DNA of 62,908 nt, the filler included, from Octopus bimaculoides (taxonomy: Eukaryota): assembly GCF_001194135.2 (NCBI RefSeq). It is 4 parts of 4 records of this genome, joined end to end, with 100 filler letters (N's around TTAATTAATTAA, not from the genome) between each part and the next. Parts side by side here need not be neighbours in the genome. Positions count along the whole stretch, not along the records: positions 48,273 to 60,530 come from NC_068987.1; 3 more parts are not named here. One strand, given 5' to 3'. Each line of letters opens with the position of its first letter. Position 1 is the first letter of the stretch. Under the pieces are notes generated by a model. That model was not told the origin of the DNA. It saw nothing but the letters and a program-made list of their open reading frames with translations, and searched no databases. Both the position numbers and the translations under genes were made by a program. Of this stretch, positions 51,798-60,530 are shown piece by piece.

Positions 51798-52620
51798 TAG
51801 CGAAATCTATCTGGAGCAATGTTAGTGAAGGGGAGTAACTCTAAGTTTTGGTAAAGAGGGAGCTAACTCTGACTTTATTAATATTTAATTATATATAATT
51901 ATACTTAGAAAAGGAAAATTCTCCTTTATATATATTTAATTATAATTAAAAAGTTAANNNNNNNNNNNNNNNNNNNNNNNNNNNNNNNNNNNNNNNNNNN
52001 NNNNNNNNNNNNNNNNNNNNNNNNNNNNNNNNNNNNNNNNNNNNNNNNNNNNNNNNNNNNNNNNNNNNNNNNNNNNNNNNNNNNNNNNNNNNNNNNNNNN
52101 NNNNNNNNNNNNNNNNNNNNNNNNNNNNNNNNNNNNNNNNNNNNNNNNNNNNNNNNNNNNNNNNNNNNNNNNNNNNNNNNNNNNNNNNNNNNNNNNNNNN
52201 NNNNNNNNNNNNNNNNNNNNNNNNNNNNNNNNNNNNNNNNNNNNNNNNNNNNNNNNNNNNNNNNNNNNNNNNNNNNNNNNNNNNNNNNNNNNNNNCGAGC
52301 TTAAACAGTACCCACTCTATTTCTTCTCAGAAAGACTATTACCACAACTTCGACTAAAATGTAAGACTAACTTTACCTAACTCTATTTTTATACCACTAT
52401 ATGCATTACTATATCCCCTAACTGTTACTCCTGCATCTCTCATACCATGAACTTTAATACTCTTCTCAACATTCTGAAGATATCTGCCAATCAAATTGGC
52501 ACATCGAAACGATCGTCAATGAATCATTATAAAATCTCAACATAATTAAATCAATGGCTAACTAGCGCAATTGACCTGCTTCTTCTTGTGTTTGTTTCTC
52601 CATTCTCCACTTGATTATTC

Positions 52621-52678
<58 letters not shown>

Positions 52679-52740
52679 AATTCAACTTGCGTTGAAAGTC
52701 AACAAAGAAAGTTTGCTGTAGAAGCGTTGAGATGTATTAA

Positions 52741-52872
52741 AGCATTTGACGCGTAATCACAGCGATGTGAGTTCGAGTCTCATGGCTAGCCACCGACAGA
52801 TTTTTCTCCAAAATATGGGTAGTTTATCCTGTTCATGTTATATTATTAGCATTATCCTGCGTTTGAGAATAA
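52741..52872 (+). repeat. Dispersed copy of the 317-bp tRNA-like unit
   Basis: GACGCGTAATCAC...GTGAGTTCGAGTCTCAT (intact B box)...TTATCCTGTTCA.GTTATATTATTAGCATTATCCTGCGTTTGAGAAT matches 47781-47900. Confidence 0.85.
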
Positions 52873-52910
52873 AATTATTTCCTTATCTGTATATGTATGT
52901 ATGTATGTAT

Positions 52911-52949
<39 letters not shown>

Positions 52950-53385
52950 GACAGAGAGTGGGGCAGTGAAAGCTTACTCTTCCTCTCTCCAAAAGCTATT
53001 CGCCCCCACCCCTCCATCCATGAATATCATATGAACTAAGTTTCGAGGATCTATAAACACGAACATAGGGGACTATATATNNNNNNNNNNNNNNNNNNNN
53101 NNNNNNNNNNNNNNNNNNNNNNNNNNNNNNNNNNNNNNNNNNNNNNNNNNNNNNNNNNNNNNNNNNNNNNNNNNNNNNNNNNNNNNNNNNNNNNNNNNNN
53201 NNNNNNNNNNNNNNNNNNNNNNNNNNNNNNNNNNNNNNNNNNNNNNNNNNNNNNNNNNNNNNNNNNNNNNNNNNNNNNNNNNNNNNNNNNNNNNNNNNNN
53301 NNNNNNNNNNNNNNNNNNNNNNNNNNNNNNNNNNCAATATTACTGTAATTTGTAGGGCGGTGAGCTGGCAGCACGCCGGGGAAAA

Positions 53386-56277
53386 TGGTGAAAGACTACA
53401 AGGAACCCAGGCCTGGAGTAATTTGCTATCGATGCAGACAAACAGGCCACATCACCAGTGAATGCATTCAGAGAAAAGGTCTAAGGGAAACTACTGCGCC
53501 GGTAGTCGTCCCGTCGAAAGAATAAAGGTGCGTATACAGTCGTTGCCAGTTTTAGATGTCGTGGTGAACGGAAAGGTGTCACGAGCCCTCGTGGACACGG
53601 GCTGCTCAACAACCCTAATGACTCCGGAGGTGGCGAAAGAATGGAGTGGAGTGAGTAGTGTAAGGTACAGAAGTTGAATACAGAGGAAGTAGCGATGTGT
53701 AGATGGTGGTACGAGGAACGAGATTTAGGTTGTGCGCGATCGTGATCGACCGCGTGGTGGACGGAATCGATGTGATGATGGGGATGGACGCCATTGTCCG
53801 TTTGGGAGGTGCTACGGTCAATGAAGCCGGTGTAACGTTCGGTGATGCGGGGGCGCTATGCACCGTGAGTCCGCAACAGGAGAGTGGTGAGAGTTGCGAA
53901 GAAAAATATGCTGCACACACCGTTACAGACAAGGATTTTCGGGCTGTGTTCGACAGCCAGCAGTGGACAGTGGAATGGTACTGGAAGGGAGATCCTCGGC
54001 GTTGAAAAAACGGAGTAGGCTGCAATCAGCATACCCCGAAAGGGGATGCCAGAAGCGAGTTCGGGGGAGAAGTGGAACGGTGGATCAACAAAGGTATTCT
54101 GATCCCTTGGAAGGAGGAAGTGGAGAGTGGAGTACTACCACTGATGGCAGTGATTCAGCCGACGAAGCATAAAGTCAGGCCAGTATTAGATTTCCGAGAG
54201 CTAAACATCCACGTATTGTGCCATATGGGCAGCGAAGCCATGGACATTTGCAGCGAAACCTTGAGAGAGTGGAGGAAGATGACAGGGGCCTCCACAATCG
54301 TCAATTTGAAGTCGGCATACCTGCAGCTACATGTGGCTGAGAGACTACGGAAATATCAGCTAGTAAGATATAAGGGTCGGACATACTGCCTGACCAGGTT
54401 GGGATTTGGGCGAAATTCAGCACCGAAAATTATGGCGACGATTCTCAAAACCATCCTGGGAAAGGCGGATAAAGTGAAAAGAGCCACCAATTCCTATATT
54501 GGTGACATCCTGGTGGACAAGAGCATAGTGTCGGCAAAGGAGATCATATGCTACCTGAAGAGTTTTTAGCTAACTGCCAAACCGCTGGAAGTGATGGAAG
54601 GAGGAGCTGCACTGGGACTCAAGATACGGAGAGACAAGGCCGGTGCATTGGTGTTTCGGAGACGGAATGAGATCCCAGAACTGGGATCAAAGATGAGTAG
54701 GCGAGAACTGTTTTCCGTGTGTGGGAAGTTGCTGGGACACTACTCAATTGCAGGATGGCTCCGGACGGTATGCAACTTCATCAAGAGGCGAGTTGAAGAA
54801 GTGAGGTGCAGTGACAACGTGAGCGAGAAGACAACTGCATTGTTGCAAGAAGTCTAGGAAAGAGTGACTACGGAGGACCAAGTAGAGGAAAATGGCATGT
54901 GCCCAAATTGAAGAATGGAATCATGTGGTGTGATGCCAGCAGCATAGCAACGGGAGTTGTCCTGGAAATTGGAGGTGTCGTAGTGGAGGATGCGGCCTGG
55001 CTCAGGAAGAAGGACGACTGCAACCACATCAACGTGACGGAGCTGGATACCGTGTTGAAGAGGATGAACCTGGCCCTGAGGTGGGGGCTGCGTACCAACG
55101 AAATCCGGGCCGATTCGACCACTGTACTTAGATGGGTGGGATCAGTGGTCACCGGCGAACCAAAGGGGGCGCAGAGATGTTGATAAGACGCCGTTTAGGA
55201 ATTCTGAGTGAGCTAGCTGCCGAGGTTGACCTGAAGTTGAGTGTGGTTTTTGTGCNNNNNNNNNNNNNNNNNNNNNNNNNNNNNNNNNNNNNNNNNNNNN
55301 NNNNNNNNNNNNNNNNNNNNNNNNNNNNNNNNNNNNNNNNNNNNNNNNNNNNNNNNNNNNNNNNNNNNNNNNNNNNNNNNNNNNNNNNNNNNNNNNNNNN
55401 NNNNNNNNNNNNNNNNNNNNNNNNNNNNNNNNNNNNNNNNNNNNNNNNNNNNNNNNNNNNNNNNNNNNNNNNNNNNNNNNNNNNNNNNNNNNNNNNNNNN
55501 NNNNNNNNNNNNNNNNNNNNNNNNNNNNNNNNNNNNNNNNNNNNNNNNNNNNNNNNNNNNNNNNNNNNNNNNNNNNNNNNNNNNNNNNNNNNNNNNNNNN
55601 NNNNNNNNNNNNNNNNNNNNNNNNNNNNNNNNNNNNNNNNNNNNNNNNNNNNNNNNNNNNNNNNNNNNNNNNNNNNNNNNNNNNNNNNNNNNNNNNNNNN
55701 NNNNNNNNNNNNNNNNNNNNNNNNNNNNNNNNNNNNNNNNNNNNNNNNNNNNNNNNNNNNNNNNNNNNNNNNNNNNNNNNNNNNNNNNNNNNNNNNNNNN
55801 NNNNNNNNNNNNNNNNNNNNNNNNNNNNNNNNNNGCCCAGGTCGGGACAGGCTGAGGAGTCAGTGCCACACATGATAATATTGAAGTACGAGTGGAGACA
55901 TCCATGTACCGCATCGCCACAACCCGCAGAAGAGAAAGAGCGTGTCTTTGTGTGGGTCGGGGAAGAAGTCTGGGTTAAACCCCCTAATGCCCAGTGCACA
56001 TCTCAATGGGGAAAGGGGACAATAACCTCTGTAAATTCGAGGAACAAATATGTCCGTAGATGGCATGATACGTCATGTTTTGGCTGTGCGCAGGATCATC
56101 ACTTCGACGGAGGATGGAGCCAACAGTAATGGACAAGAGGACGAAGCTGGCAGCAACATGCCAGGAATTGAGGCCAGTCCTGAAGTCCCACGGCGGTCGC
56201 AGAGGGACTGGTGCCCTACTCACTGGTTGGTTGATTACGAGACAAGTTAAGGCGTATGGTCAAGGTTGAGGAGAGGG
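53386..56277 (+). mobile_element. Decayed LTR retrotransposon internal region (gag end, PR, RT, RNase H, IN; Ty3/gypsy domain order)
   Basis: Gag knuckle CYRCRQTGHITSEC (53424-53465); protease LVDTGCS and DVMMGMD; RT VRPVLDFRELN, (D)LKSAYLQ, LTRLGFG.NSAP, YIGDI (YxDD mutated); RNase H WCDAS...HINVTELD...DSTTVLRW; IN C-terminus VGEEVWVKPP...WGKG. The integrase core falls in the gap at 55256-55834. Polypurine tract GAGGAGAGGG at 56268-56277. Confidence 0.9.
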
Positions 56278-56566
56278 TGTTGGCAAGTTGGTTGAATGAT
56301 CTTCAGATCAGTGGGGCGTGTGGTGTTATGAGCCAGGCTGTGTTGTAGGGAAGGACCAGAAGTGAGGGAGTGCGCATTTCCTGTCGGAAGTGGGGCCTGT
56401 GGGTCCCACTGGGAGGGCTGCGGTGGGCATGCAGGGTCGGCAAGGTGCGAACAGCCAGTTGGCGGTGGACAGCGTACGAGAGCAGACGTGTTAGACGGTA
56501 CGGTGGCAGACAGAGCATGTGGACGCTGTGAGTGACCCTTCTAGATTGACAGGTAAGACTACCACA
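56278..56566 (+). mobile_element. Probable 3' LTR (right end uncertain)
   Basis: Begins TG immediately after the polypurine tract; GC-rich until about ACCACA at 56566. No 5' LTR is visible for comparison. Confidence 0.5.
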
Positions 56567-57419
56567 ATTCTCTCTTTGCTTACATCTTTTTCTTCTTTCA
56601 CATAACCATCAAATGTTCTGTTTGAGAGGACGAGAAATCTTACATTGATCTACTTCTCCTCTCGTTTACTCAGTACAACTGTTGACTTTTTTAAAGTTTA
56701 ATTTTGATTTAATGATGATCGGTTGGCCAAAGTCATTTCTTTGAAAATGATCGTTTCACAGAATATTAATCCATGATGTGTCGAGGATTCAATGTTATTC
56801 CATTTGAAAAACTTTTAGCCATGCAAAATTTATCTAATGTAATGTCTATCAACCGCTACTATACAACTACATTTTTTCCACTGATTTCACGGATTCCCAT
56901 GACTCTCCGTCGTCATGCAATTCCATTATTATGAAATGAATTGGAAGCATGTGTCATAATGAATCTTTCCTTAGCTGATGACACTACCATGGACATCACT
57001 CCTTTGAATGTGTTGCAGTTACTCTTCTGCTAGAGCTTGGTGGTCCTGACCATTGATCTTCTAGGTTTCCTCCGCTCAGCATCAATGTAAGAAGCACTAT
57101 TGACTCGGTTGAACTCTTCCGCTACCTCTTCACATTCCACCATGCTGCAGTCCTGTGACTTCGCCGTATCTCTAGCAGGATGGCTAAACGAGTGCTGTGC
57201 CTTGCCAAAGGGCAGCCTCGATTAGGTATTTTCAAAGTAACATAAACTATATACAACTACATAAATAATGTCGATTAAGTATAAATACAGTAAAAACAGG
57301 CATTGGTCTCTTGCTTTCTAACATATGTCATTTTATGGAGAGAATACTGCAAGTGAGATGTATTAAAACCGTGAAACGTTGTAGCAATTATATAGAAAAA
57401 CACATTAAAAAATTAATAC

Positions 57420-57459
57420 CCGCTACTATTCAGGAGGAAATACAATATTAAGTTATATA
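57420..57459 (+). promoter_or_regulatory. Candidate upstream Pol III elements of the Gly(CCC) copy
   Basis: CCGCTACTA at -58 and ATATTAAGTTATATA at -33, the same offsets as at the Gly(GCC) gene. Confidence 0.5.
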
Positions 57460-57477
57460 AAATTGACTACAGTGTCA

Positions 57478-57548
57478 GCATAGGTGGTCCAATGGTAGAA
57501 TGCTCGCCTCCCACGCGGGAGGCGCGGTTTCGGTTCCCGGACTATACA
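57478..57548 (+). pseudogene. tRNA-Gly(CCC) pseudogene
   Basis: 71 nt, colinear with tRNA-Gly, anticodon loop CT-CCC-AC. Mismatches in the acceptor stem (2), D stem (1) and T stem (2), plus A58G. Confidence 0.85.
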
Positions 57549-57915
57549 TATAAAAGTAACTTTTTATTGTGTTATTTATATATTACATTTTGTTGACATA
57601 CATTTCCAACATTTGTCGGATCTTTTGTGTAGCTGCACCTGTGGAAATTTCAAAGTTTATTTAAAATTTTAAAATTTGGTGTATTGTATAATTTTCCACG
57701 CTGAATTTCAGAAGATATTTTTCTTAGTCCAGAAAAAAATTATGAAAAAAAGTTAAAGAAGTTTAACTTCTGATAATTTTTACCCAGTCAGGAAACGATT
57801 TGGAAGCTGTCATTTTGTGCGTGATAGCATATATTGTGAGTGTTTCTTTGCGATGGACAGCACAAAAGCCACCTGCCCATCTTTCCTTAAAGCAACGTAT
57901 TCCTCACACTCTCCA

Positions 57916-57984
<69 letters not shown>

Positions 57985-58519
57985 NNNNNNNNNNNNNNNN
58001 NNNNNNNNNNNNNNNNNNNNNNNNNNNNNNNNNNNNNNNNNNNNNNNNNNNNNNNNNNNNNNNNNNNNNNNNNNNNNNNNNNNNNNNNNNNNNNNNNNNN
58101 NNNNNNNNNNNNNNNNNNNNNNNNNNNNNNNNNNNNNNNNNNNNNNNNNNNNNNNNNNNNNNNNNNNNNNNNNNNNNNNNNNNNNNNNNNNNNNNNNNNN
58201 NNNNNNNNNNNNNNNNNNNNNNNNNNNNNNNNNNNNNNNNNNNNNNNNNNNNNNNNNNNNNNNNNNNNNNNNNNNNNNNNNNNNNNNNNNNNNNNNNNNN
58301 NNNNNNNNNNNNNNNNNNNNNNNNNNNNNNNNNNNNNNNNNNNNNNNNNNNNNNNNNNNNNNNNNNNNNNNNNNNNNNNNNNNNNNNNNNNNNNNNNNNN
58401 NNNNNNNNNNNNNNNNNNNNNNNNNNNNNNNNNNNNNNNNNNNNNNNNNNNNNNNNNNNNNNNNNNNNNNNNNNNNNNNNNNNNNNNNNNNNNNNNNNNN
58501 NNNNNNNNNNNNNNNNATA

Positions 58520-58880
58520 AAGTTAGAGTATAGTGCTGATAAATTTTATATCAAAGTGCTTGATGAATTGAACAGATTGACAAATAAATTTTAAATAACT
58601 CGTTATTTGTAGATTCTGTTTTCTTTAATTTCTCTTGTAACCAGCAACGGTCATCACGGCAGGGTCGTTGCCATGGTATTGTTAATGAGGGAACACCAAA
58701 GTCCAGTGAACAGGAGTATCAAGCACGATGCATAACCTGTTGATAGAAGTGCATTTTCTCACATTAAAACTAGTTCATAGCGCTTTCACAGATGGAGTGG
58801 TGGGGCGAATGGCATTTGGTGAGCGGGAGAGGAAGGTTCCACTACTCCATTCTCTTCCTTGGCGATTGGCTTGCATCATG
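58520..58880 (+). repeat. Left outer arm of the palindrome
   Basis: Reverse complement of 59638-59998 with 9 substitutions in 361 bp by manual comparison. The left end abuts an N gap. Confidence 0.95.
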
Positions 58881-59193
58881 AAAAAGGATGTAATCGGTCA
58901 AGTGGCTATGCAGGACAGACGGACATAGAACCACACACAACACTGTATAAAGTGCTGTGAATGGATATTTGCTTATAGGTTTCTTGTTTCAAGCCTCTGA
59001 TTTAAAATCAAGCTCTCTCGTCGACAAATGGGATCTTTTCTTTAAAGAAGAAAACATTTTCTCACAGGAAGTAGATGTGGCTGGTATGGTCAGAATCAGA
59101 ATCAGAGTTAGTAATTCTGTTACTTCGGCCAGGGCTTGATTTATTTCATACTCTCGTATTAAGTCTGCGACTTCTCAGTTGTGTGACATTTAA

Positions 59194-59233
59194 CCGCTAC
59201 TACTCTGAAGAGAATGACATATTAAGTTATATA
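59194..59233 (+). promoter_or_regulatory. Candidate upstream Pol III elements of tRNA-Gly(GCC)
   Basis: CCGCTACTA at -58 and TATA-like ATATTAAGTTATATA at -33, conserved with 57420-57459 while the spacers differ. Confidence 0.5.
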
Positions 59234-59251
59234 GGAGGTTAGAAAATGTCA

Positions 59252-59322
59252 GCATCGGTGGTTCAGTGGTAGAATGCTCGCCTGCCACGCGGGCGACCCG
59301 GGTTCGATTCCCGGCCGATGCA
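59252..59322 (+). tRNA. tRNA-Gly(GCC), intact
   Basis: GCATCGG/CCGATGC acceptor stem, D arm GTTC-AGTGGTA-GAAT, anticodon arm CTCGC-CTGCCAC-GCGGG, T arm CCGGG-TTCGATT-CCCGG, discriminator A. Canonical metazoan Gly-GCC. Confidence 0.98.
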
Positions 59323-59335
59323 CTGTGGAATACTA

Positions 59336-59349
59336 TTTTTTTTTTTTTT
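59336..59349 (+). terminator. Pol III oligo-T terminator
   Basis: T14 run 13 nt downstream of the tRNA. Confidence 0.85.
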
Positions 59350-59637
59350 ACTGTGTTAACTTTTGACGTCATACATTTTGAACATTTGTCAAGTCAACTT
59401 GATTTTAAATAAGAAGCTTGAAACAGGAAATCTACAATCAAATATTGATTCATGGCATTTATTCTGTGTTACTTGTGGTTCTTTGTCCGTGTGTCACGCA
59501 GTTATTTGACCAACTACACTCGTTTTCAGTCATTAGACTGTGGTTATTCTGGGGCACCACCTTGAATTATCAGTAAACATTTGTGTGTGTGTGTGTATCA
59601 GTGGTGAAGTGTTACTTGGAAACCAGGAAATGCAGTC

Positions 59638-59998
59638 CATGATGCAAGCCAATCGCCAAGGTAGAGAATGGAGTAGTGGCACCTTCCTCTCCCGCTCACC
59701 AAATGCCATTCGCCCTACCACTCCATCTGTGAAAGCGCTATGAACTAGTTTTAATGTGAGAAAATGCACTTCTATCAACAGGTTATGCATCGTGCTTGAT
59801 ACTACTGTTCACTGGACTTTGGTGTTCCCTCATTAACAATACCTTGTCAACGACCCTGCCGTGATGACCGTTGCTGGTTACAAGAGAAATTAAAGAAAAC
59901 AGAATCTACAAATAACGAGTTATTTAAAATTTATTTGTCAATCTGTTCAATTCATCAAGCACTTTGATATAAAATTTATTAGCACTACGCTCTAACTT
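59638..59998 (-). repeat. Right outer arm of the palindrome
   Basis: Inverse of 58520-58880. The ORF track independently shows the same 51-aa string on opposite strands. Confidence 0.95.
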
Positions 59999-60530
59999 CA
60001 TCTTCAAAATACCTTTATTCATGGAAATGAAAACGAAATTACTCAAGTTTCCTTCCTTTGAGAACATCTATGTTGTTGTTGGCACTCCGTCGCTTACGAC
60101 ATCGAGGGTTCCAGNNNNNNNNNNNNNNNNNNNNNNNNNNNNNNNNNNNNNNNNNNNNNNNNNNNNNNNNNNNNNNNNNNNNNNNNNNNNNNNNNNNNNN
60201 NNNNNNNNNNNNNNTTTGTTTATTGTTCTTCTCTCGGTTATTCTCTTCTGATGTCGGAGTTCTTTACTGACAGCTTTTAGCTCCTGCTTGAGGGTAAGCA
60301 GTTTTCAAGTGAGCATCCTCATTTTGCAATCTCTCATTTTACATCTTTCTGAATAAACTCTATTTCTTCTTGCAATTCATGCCTTGTTGGAGCCGAACGA
60401 CTATACTTTTACTTAGCTTACCAGTTGCTAACCTTCTCTGTAAATTTTATGCATTCGTTTCTTGTTTTGTCTTATTTTTATGTTGTTCTGTTCAACTTTT
60501 TATTGTGTGTATACGTGTGTATGTACACAC

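What the first reader, a model, noticed from the sequence alone, without database searches (positions are those of the whole stretch)
58520..59998. Intact tRNA-Gly(GCC) at the centre of a two-age palindrome (outer arms ~97% identical, inner arms ~70-80%)
Seen: 361-bp arms (58520-58880 / 59638-59998) differ at only 9 positions. Further in, 58898-59030 is also an inverted homologue of 59382-59515, for example TTTCTTGTTTCAAGCCTCTGATTTAAAATCAAG versus the reverse complement TTTCCTGTTTCAAGCTTCTTATTTAAAATCAAG. The inner match is much more diverged, and a SINE-B tail fragment sits in the right side only. The left arm is an inverted copy of the tRNA's downstream flank but lacks its own tRNA. Inference: an old inverted duplication of a tRNA unit whose distal arms were later homogenised by arm-to-arm gene conversion, or a foldback element that captured a tRNA gene. 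Either would be an unusual setting for a tRNA gene.
Basis: partly seen in the sequence, partly recalled or inferred. Interest (0 to 1): 0.7.

Follow-up and report, generated by a model that had tools for sequence, protein, structure and literature searches.

The report
Inverted repeat pair around tRNA-Gly gene
An ordinary, intact glycine tRNA gene sits between two old, oppositely oriented copies of a non-coding repeat in which one 342-base patch has been made nearly identical again, probably by gene conversion; the structure is real in this draft assembly but not exceptional.

Summary
The arms 58517-58880 and 60001-59638 match at 354 of 364 positions with no indels. A weaker inverted match, about 76%, continues inward over 58881-59030 / 59527-59383. 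A canonical tRNA-Gly(GCC) gene (59252-59322) lies between the arms.

Four details change the picture.
- The left arm starts at the first base after a 532-N gap, so the outer boundary is unknown.
- The near-identical part is a 342-nt patch (K2P 0.018). It is flanked on both sides by about 0.24 divergence.
- The inner edge of the patch falls exactly at a 110-nt insertion found only on the right (59528-59637).
- A 95-nt piece of the arm recurs at 52949-53044 with about 77% identity.

The tRNA belongs to a separate 200-bp module. A decayed direct copy of that module lies 1.77 kb upstream (57417-57617), and the module ends exactly where the inverted homology begins. So no tRNA unit was duplicated in inverted orientation.

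Best reading: two old copies of a repeat in inverted orientation, with a gene-conversion patch, and the tRNA gene as a bystander in the spacer.

I could not test genome-wide copy number, orthologous loci or assembly correctness, because no octopus DNA was reachable. Interest is low to moderate.

The parts
58517..58538 (-). Left arm, outermost zone. Low-identity inverted homology to 59980-60001 (18/22; all 4 differences are transitions). It abuts the gap 57985-58516.
   Evidence: Fisher p=0.0017 against the middle zone; K2P 0.23
58539..58880 (-). Left copy of the 342-nt high-identity patch. Partner 59638-59979; 336/342 identical; K2P 0.018.
58881..59030 (-). Left inner arm. Old inverted homologue of 59383-59527 (about 76%, 3 small indels). 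Ends ...GACAAATG.
59031..59190 (.). Single-copy spacer segment W'. It starts with GGATCTTTT and holds no tRNA remnant and no other match in the piece.
59191..59390 (+). tRNA module B. Conserved upstream blocks include ATATTAAGTTATATA at 59219-59233. The tRNA-Gly(GCC) gene is at 59252-59322 and the T14 terminator at 59336-59349. The downstream flank ends AACATTTGTC.
59383..59527 (+). Right inner arm (old homology). Begins CATTTGTC, overlapping the end of the tRNA module by 8 nt.
59528..59637 (-). 110-nt insertion present only in the right arm: a reverse-oriented SINE-tail fragment, a (TG)7 run and about 36 further nt. It sits exactly at the identity step.
59638..60001 (+). Right outer arm. 59638-59979 is the high-identity patch and 59980-60001 is the low-identity outer zone.
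57417..57626 (+). tRNA module A. Direct, about 74% copy of module B, with a decayed tRNA-Gly-like sequence at 57478-57548 (CCC at the anticodon position, broken T stem). It is followed by GGATCTTTT instead of the arm sequence.
   Evidence: (28.4 bits, gathering 29)
52949..53044 (+). Third, partial copy (95 nt, about 77%) of arm segment 59659-59751 / 58858-58764. It lies between a microsatellite and the gap that starts at 53081.
   Evidence: (nhmmer E 5e-11)
57985..58516 (.). Assembly gap (532 N) that cuts off the left arm.

Best explanation
The arms are two old copies of a non-coding repeat unit X, at least 0.5 kb long, that lie in opposite orientation 352 bp apart.

The background divergence between the two copies is K of about 0.24. 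That is the same as their divergence from a third partial copy 5.5 kb away, and the same as the divergence between the two tRNA modules.

Within this old pair, one 342-bp stretch was copied from one arm to the other, or kept alike, by non-allelic intrachromatid gene conversion. This gives 98.2% identity. On the inner side the tract stops at a 110-nt insertion that interrupts homology in the right arm.

The tRNA-Gly(GCC) gene is a normal RNA polymerase III gene with A and B boxes, a T14 terminator and a conserved TATA-like upstream block. It lies in the spacer as part of an independent 200-bp duplicated tRNA-Gly module. It is neither the unit that was inverted nor the cause of the symmetry.

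Shown: the anatomy, the identity zones, the module boundaries and the third copy.
Inferred: gene conversion as the mechanism, the bystander status of the tRNA, and the correctness of the assembly.
For: - Three-zone identity profile, 18/22, then 336/342, then about 76%, with K2P 0.23 / 0.018 / 0.25. Both flank-versus-patch contrasts are significant (p=0.0017 and 4e-12).
- The step at 58880 coincides to the base with the right-only insertion 59528-59637. On the left the homology is continuous across that point.
- The patch has 6 substitutions and no indels over 342 nt. This is what two real, recently homogenised paralogues would show.
- The third copy at 52949-53044 is about 77% identical to both arms.
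- The tRNA module A/B homology (57417-57617 against 59191-59390, 74%) ends where the arm homology begins.
- The spacer holds no inverted tRNA remnant.
- The arms have no family match and no conserved reading frame: no Pfam hit, no protein homologue, and the third copy breaks the frame.
Against: - Recombination between sequences only about 76% alike is inefficient. A late conversion event therefore needs either a rare initiation or continuous homogenisation since the duplication.
- The outer low-identity zone is only 22 nt long and lies at a contig end next to a gap.
- Copy number of X in the genome is unknown. The third copy covers only 95 nt.
- The correctness of the assembly could not be checked.
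- The three-way junction (CATTTGTC and GGATCTTTT) is not explained by this model.
Confidence: 0.45

Rival explanations
1. Two independently inserted copies of a mosaic transposable element, with no gene conversion. Both copies carry a recently shared module (the 342-nt block) joined to anciently diverged subfamily-specific parts. They happen to lie head to head on either side of the tRNA gene.
For: - Part of the arm is a dispersed repeat.
- The piece is dense in repeats and holds another inverted repeat made of two SINE copies (51087-51258 / 51711-51540).
- A retrotransposon lies 3 kb away.
Against: - The model needs two mosaic boundaries at homologous positions in both copies.
- One of those boundaries would have to coincide by chance with the right-only 110-nt insertion.
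- No target-site duplications, tails or terminal structures could be identified.
- The third copy matches only 95 nt internal to the block.
Confidence: 0.2
2. A long terminal-inverted-repeat or foldback-type mobile element is involved. Either [arm - spacer with tRNA - arm] is an element carrying a tRNA gene as cargo, or the element is [X...X'] inserted at the CATTTGTC|GGATCTTTT site downstream of a tRNA module, and the unit was then tandemly duplicated. In the second case the contig would show the right end of one copy and the left end of the next.
For: Module A reads ...CATTTGTC|GGATCTTTT. This is the left flank of X joined to the right flank of X', like an empty site. The 9-mer at a fixed offset has a chance probability of about 6e-6, or about 1.6e-4 allowing for offset slack. 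Gaps flank both arms, as expected if long palindromic DNA resisted short-read assembly.
Against: - There is no direct target-site duplication. The 8-mer is inverted, not direct, on the two sides.
- The element's would-be termini are the least conserved part (76%).
- There are no subterminal tandem repeats and no transposase.
- W (57618-57916) and W' (59031-59190) are unrelated beyond the 9-mer.
- The outer ends cannot be seen.
Confidence: 0.1
3. Assembly artefact. The left arm, which runs straight into a 532-N gap, is misplaced, misoriented or chimerically joined sequence from the right arm's neighbourhood or from another copy.
For: The left arm starts at the first base after the gap. The same scaffold shows a clear gap-edge artefact: a perfect 40-nt direct duplication on either side of a 10-N gap (49950-49989 / 50000-50039).
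Against: - The arms differ by 10 substitutions and no indels, so this is not a perfect fold-back.
- The left arm continues without a gap into its own, much more diverged inner segment, which lacks the 110-nt insertion. It is therefore a distinct paralogous sequence and not a flipped allele.
- Both arms and the tRNA lie in one ungapped contig, 58517-60114.
Confidence: 0.12
4. One reading: an old inverted duplication of a whole tRNA unit (gene plus flank), with the left copy later losing its tRNA.
For: The left arm is an inverted copy of sequence that lies downstream of the tRNA.
Against: - The inverted homology begins 60 nt after the tRNA, exactly at the end of the separately duplicated 200-bp module.
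- 59031-59190 shows no similarity to the reverse complement of either module. In 200 shuffles, 14 reached the observed score against module B and 191 against module A.
Confidence: 0.05

Closest known systems
Inverted segmental duplications and palindromes whose arms are kept alike by arm-to-arm gene conversion, for example the primate sex-chromosome palindromes (PMC6790999; general knowledge)
   Same: Inverted arms around a unique spacer. Identity is much higher than the age of the structure implies. Homogenisation is limited to stretches of uninterrupted homology.
   Different: The arms seen here are about 0.5 kb, not tens of kb to Mb. The high-identity part is a 342-nt patch at 98%, not whole arms at over 99.9%. 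The arms carry no genes. Conversion is inferred from a single sequence and not from a comparison within and between species.
Yeast chromosome VII '403' site: tRNA genes lying among nearby inverted repeats (Ty LTR fragments), a site linked to fusion of the inverted repeats and to unstable chromosomes (PMC5065131, and Paek et al. 2009 cited there)
   Same: A tRNA gene lies between inverted copies of dispersed repeat DNA a few hundred bp apart. This architecture can undergo template exchange or recombination between the repeats.
   Different: The organism is different and the repeats are of unknown class. No evidence of instability, fork stalling or rearrangement is available here.
Foldback or long-TIR DNA transposons
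   Same: Long inverted arms flank a non-repeated middle segment.
   Different: There are no subterminal tandem repeats, no visible target-site duplication and no transposase. The inner arm parts are more diverged than the outer parts. The outer termini cannot be seen.
tRNA-derived SINEs of octopods (Ohshima & Okada 1994, cited in PMC10886601)
   Same: The same piece holds such SINE copies, for example the one whose tRNA-like head starts at 51376. A tail fragment of one lies in the right arm.
   Different: The tRNA-Gly here is a complete cloverleaf at 66.6 bits. Its own T14 terminator follows 13 nt after the 3' end, and no SINE body follows. It is a gene, not a SINE head.

Membership tests
Nuclear tRNA gene (RNA polymerase III type 2 promoter) | Cloverleaf scoring above the Rfam tRNA gathering score, with a defined anticodon | tested here: met
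   RF00005 at 66.6 bits against 29, full length 1-71. ARAGORN calls Gly(GCC).
Nuclear tRNA gene (RNA polymerase III type 2 promoter) | Internal A box and B box, and an oligo-T terminator shortly downstream | tested here: met
   Read from the sequence: TGGTTCAGTGGT at gene positions 8-19, GGTTCGATTCC at positions 52-62, and T14 at 59336-59349.
Nuclear tRNA gene (RNA polymerase III type 2 promoter) | Transcribed and aminoacylated | not testable with these tools
   No expression data were available.
Palindrome maintained by arm-to-arm gene conversion | Two inverted arms with a unique spacer | tested here: met
   The spacer is 352 nt between the full arms and 757 nt between the high-identity parts.
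Palindrome maintained by arm-to-arm gene conversion | Arm identity is heterogeneous in a way that points to homogenised tracts | tested here: met
   K2P 0.018 in the 342-nt patch against 0.23-0.25 on both sides. The inner edge of the patch lies at a heterology.
Palindrome maintained by arm-to-arm gene conversion | Arms more alike within a species than orthologous arms are between species | not testable with these tools
   No related octopod sequence could be reached.
Foldback / long-TIR transposon | Target-site duplication outside the outer ends | not testable with these tools
   The left outer end is in the gap 57985-58516. The right outer end is undefined before the gap that starts at 60115.
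Foldback / long-TIR transposon | Tandem subrepeats in the arms (classical foldback elements) | tested here: not met
   Tandem Repeats Finder reports only (TCAGAA)2.8 in the spacer and (TG)7.5 in the insertion.
Foldback / long-TIR transposon | Multiple dispersed copies with the same ends | tested here: inconclusive
   Only a 95-nt internal fragment recurs in the 12-kb piece. The genome could not be searched.
tRNA-derived SINE | A tRNA-related head continuous with a non-tRNA body and a 3' tail | tested here: not met
   The terminator T14 lies 13 nt after the gene, and the downstream flank is shared only with module A.
Fold-back assembly or read chimera | Perfectly identical arms, usually with little or no spacer | tested here: not met
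   10 substitutions in 364 nt, a diverged inner continuation and a spacer of 352 nt or more.

The most novel reading that the evidence does not exclude
The structure may be mechanistically tied to the tRNA gene. One possibility is a mobile long-inverted-repeat element that carries, or specifically inserts beside, tRNA-Gly modules. The junction CATTTGTC|GGATCTTTT in module A would then be the empty site. The other possibility is an inverted duplication triggered by replication stalling at an active RNA polymerase III gene, with the arms still exchanging sequence.
Probability: 0.1. Interest if true: 0.55.

Novelty: new member of a known kind. Interest (0 to 1): 0.25.

Why it matters
If the patch is a true conversion tract, the locus is a small, clean example of sequence exchange between short inverted repeats in a cephalopod genome. 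One tract end is set by an insertion, and a functional tRNA gene lies in the invertible spacer. That would be useful for studies of repeat dynamics but is not surprising. It would matter more only if the arm family proved to be systematically associated with tRNA-Gly modules. That would point to a mobile element that targets or carries RNA polymerase III genes in molluscs.

Tried and rejected
External copies of the arms.
- Exact look-ups of five window reading frames that cover the arms, the spacer and the tRNA antisense strand found nothing on record.
- A protein homology search with the 66-aa arm frame found no candidate.
- Two exact-pattern scans of metagenome contigs, one with arm sequence and one with the tRNA upstream motif, gave no hits.

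Sampling related genomic DNA through the nearby retrotransposon.
- The reverse transcriptase frame has 121 relatives at E<=1e-10. The best named one is from the octopod Argonauta hians at 65% identity.
- The two long ENA contigs I fetched (L001, L002) contain no arm, spacer or SINE match. They come from a different organism and were no help.

Ideas rejected.
- Coding arms. The 51 aa shared by both arm frames differ only at three synonymous third positions. However, there is no Pfam hit and no homologue, and the third copy has an indel and a stop in that frame. I treat the frame as chance.
- An inverted tRNA remnant in 59031-59190.
- Homology between W (57618-57916) and W' (59031-59190) beyond the 9-mer.
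- Elevated mutation near the tRNA gene as the cause of the diverged inner arms. The change is a step at an insertion and not a gradient, and the left inner arm lies 221-371 nt from the gene.
- Classical foldback subrepeats.

Literature. Searches gave analogies only and nothing on this locus or on octopod nuclear tRNA gene organisation.

Not used: the third protein homology search. The only remaining candidate frame, on the minus strand at 57030-57210, has no family hit and was unlikely to lead to an orthologous locus.

Full report
**What is in the sequence**

The piece 48273-60530 is a gap-ridden draft scaffold. N runs lie at 49990-49999, 51958-52295, 53081-53334, 55256-55834, 57985-58516 and 60115-60214. 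It is AT-rich and full of microsatellites and SINE copies.

The finding lies in one ungapped contig, 58517-60114. The repeat finder and a self-BLAST both report an inverted repeat, 58517-58880 against 60001-59638. It spans 364 nt with 10 substitutions and no indels (97.3%, E 3e-141).

The left arm begins at the very first base after the 532-N gap, so its true length is unknown.

Inward, the homology continues without a break on the left (58881-59030). On the right it continues once 59528-59637 is removed (59527-59383). Identity here is about 76% with three small indels (BLAST E 2.8e-24; alignment).

**The tRNA gene**

ARAGORN calls tRNA-Gly(GCC) at 59252-59323. Rfam scores 59252-59322 at 66.6 bits against a gathering score of 29.

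Reading the sequence shows canonical A and B boxes and a run of 14 T at 59336-59349. This is an ordinary, apparently functional RNA polymerase III gene and not a SINE head.

**New elements of the anatomy**

1. A second tRNA module. 57417-57617 is a direct copy of 59191-59390 at about 74%.
   - It holds a decayed tRNA-Gly-like sequence at 57478-57548. This has CCC at the anticodon position and a broken T stem. Rfam gives 28.4 bits, just under the threshold, and ARAGORN does not call it.
   - The two modules share conserved upstream blocks: CCGCTACTA, ATATTAAGTTATATA at -33 to -19, and TGTCA at -5 to -1.
   - They also share a downstream block ending AACATTTGTC.
   - The module homology ends at 59390 and the inverted arm homology begins at 59383. 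The tRNA module and the arm repeat are therefore separate units that abut with an 8-nt overlap.
   - 59031-59190 holds no remnant of an inverted module.

2. Three identity zones, not two.

| Zone (left-arm coordinates) | Identity | K2P |
|---|---|---|
| 58517-58538 | 18/22 | 0.23 |
| 58539-58880 | 336/342 | 0.018 |
| 58881-59030 | 113 matches, 30 substitutions over 143 aligned positions; about 75% counting 7 gap columns | 0.25 |

   - Both flank-versus-patch contrasts are significant (p=0.0017 and 4e-12).
   - The inner step lies exactly where the right arm carries a 110-nt insertion.
   - The insertion consists of a reverse-oriented SINE-tail fragment (59522-59567, matching 51776-51732), a (TG)7 run and about 36 further nt.

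3. A third partial copy. A 95-nt piece of the patch recurs at 52949-53044 with about 77% identity to both arms (nhmmer E 5e-11 and 3e-9). That is the same divergence as between the old parts of the arms.

4. A second inverted repeat in the same 12 kb. Two SINE copies form an inverted repeat at 51087-51258 / 51711-51540 (175 nt, 72.6%). Inverted pairs of repeats are evidently commonplace here.

**Interpretation**

Everything in this neighbourhood is about 25% diverged: the inner arms, the outermost 22 nt, the third copy and the two tRNA modules. The one exception is the 342-nt patch at 1.8%.

A near-identical patch with two ends inside an old inverted pair, with one end at a heterology, is the expected footprint of non-allelic gene conversion between the arms. 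It could also reflect homogenisation that persisted only where uninterrupted homology was long enough.

The tRNA gene lies in the spacer, 221 nt from the left full arm and 60 nt from the right. It belongs to a different duplication history. I therefore read it as a bystander.

As a single strand the region would fold into a long stem. With a spacer of 352 nt or more, cruciform extrusion in duplex DNA is not expected (general knowledge).

**Rivals**

- Mosaic transposable-element copies inserted independently. This needs coincident mosaic boundaries, one of them at the insertion.
- A long-TIR or foldback element. It gains some support from an odd three-way junction. Module A reads CATTTGTC|GGATCTTTT, the right arm follows CATTTGTC, and the inverted left arm ends GACAAATG|GGATCTTTT. 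The chance of the 9-mer at a fixed offset is about 6e-6. Against it: there is no direct target-site duplication, the would-be termini are the most diverged part, there are no subrepeats, and the outer ends cannot be seen. I leave this junction as unexplained.
- An assembly artefact. It cannot be excluded, because the arm abuts a gap and the scaffold shows a 40-nt perfect duplication across a 10-N gap at 49950-50039. However, the left arm has its own diverged continuation and substitution-only differences. It is not a flipped copy of the right arm.
This is contradicted by the module boundaries.

**Limits**

No DNA of this or a closely related octopod could be reached.
- Exact look-ups of five window reading frames found nothing.
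- A protein search with the arm frame found nothing.
- Two metagenome scans found nothing.
- ENA contigs carrying related Pao-like reverse transcriptases hold no arm or SINE match.

Genome-wide copy number, orthologous loci and read-level support therefore remain untested.

**Comparison and verdict**

The structure works like small-scale versions of conversion-maintained inverted duplications (PMC6790999). In architecture it resembles the yeast chromosome VII site where tRNA genes lie among inverted repeats (PMC5065131). It does not meet the tested criteria for a classical foldback element, a tRNA-derived SINE or a fold-back chimera.

I rate it as a new member of a known kind, with interest 0.25.

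Noticed in passing
window 57478-57548 (module 57417-57626): A decayed tRNA-Gly-like sequence with CCC at the anticodon position lies 1774 nt upstream of the intact gene on the same strand. Acceptor-stem pair 5-68 is A-T where the intact gene has C-G, a change on both sides. The copy may therefore once have been a functional isodecoder. Its T stem is now broken (Rfam 28.4 bits, gathering score 29).
   Followed up: partly
window 57608-57626, 59023-59039, 59381-59398: Three-way junction. CATTTGTC is shared by the end of both tRNA modules and by the inner ends of both inverted arms. GGATCTTTT follows the module in copy A and follows the inverted left arm in the B locus. No model I tried fits all three junctions.
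   Followed up: partly
window 49950-49989 and 50000-50039: A perfect 40-nt direct duplication lies on either side of a 10-N gap. This is most likely an unmerged overlap of contig ends, that is, an assembly artefact at a gap edge.
   Followed up: no
window 53462-56250 (+): Remnant of a BEL/Pao-like LTR retrotransposon. It has aspartyl protease, reverse transcriptase, DUF7047 and RNase H-like frames, broken by frameshifts and by the gap 55256-55834. The best named relative is from the octopod Argonauta hians (65% identity over the reverse transcriptase frame).
   Followed up: partly
window 51087-51258 / 51540-51711, and 51376-about 51795: A full tRNA-derived SINE copy (tRNA-like head at 51376, internal microsatellite) and a partial second copy in opposite orientation form another inverted repeat (175 nt, 72.6%, about 280-nt spacer).
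   Followed up: no
window 58728-58880 (+) and 59790-59638 (-): Both arms carry the same 51-aa open frame. The three arm differences inside it are all synonymous third-position changes. There is no family hit or homologue, and the third copy breaks the frame, so this is probably chance.
   Followed up: yes
window 57000-57210 (-): A GC-richer stretch (about 48% against about 33% around it) holds a 63-codon frame without stops (SRLPFGKAQHSF...MVRTTKL). It has no Pfam hit. It may be a decayed transposable-element or exon fragment.
   Followed up: partly
window 60073-60114: The sequence GTTGTTGGCACTCCGTCGCTTACGACATCGAGGGTTCCAG runs into the 100-N gap. From memory it resembles the start of a common octopus interspersed repeat. 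I did not verify this with a tool.
   Followed up: no
window 49270-49336 (-): Weak similarity to the 3' half of the tRNA-Gly module (nhmmer E 0.002). This is probably the head of another tRNA-derived SINE.
   Followed up: no
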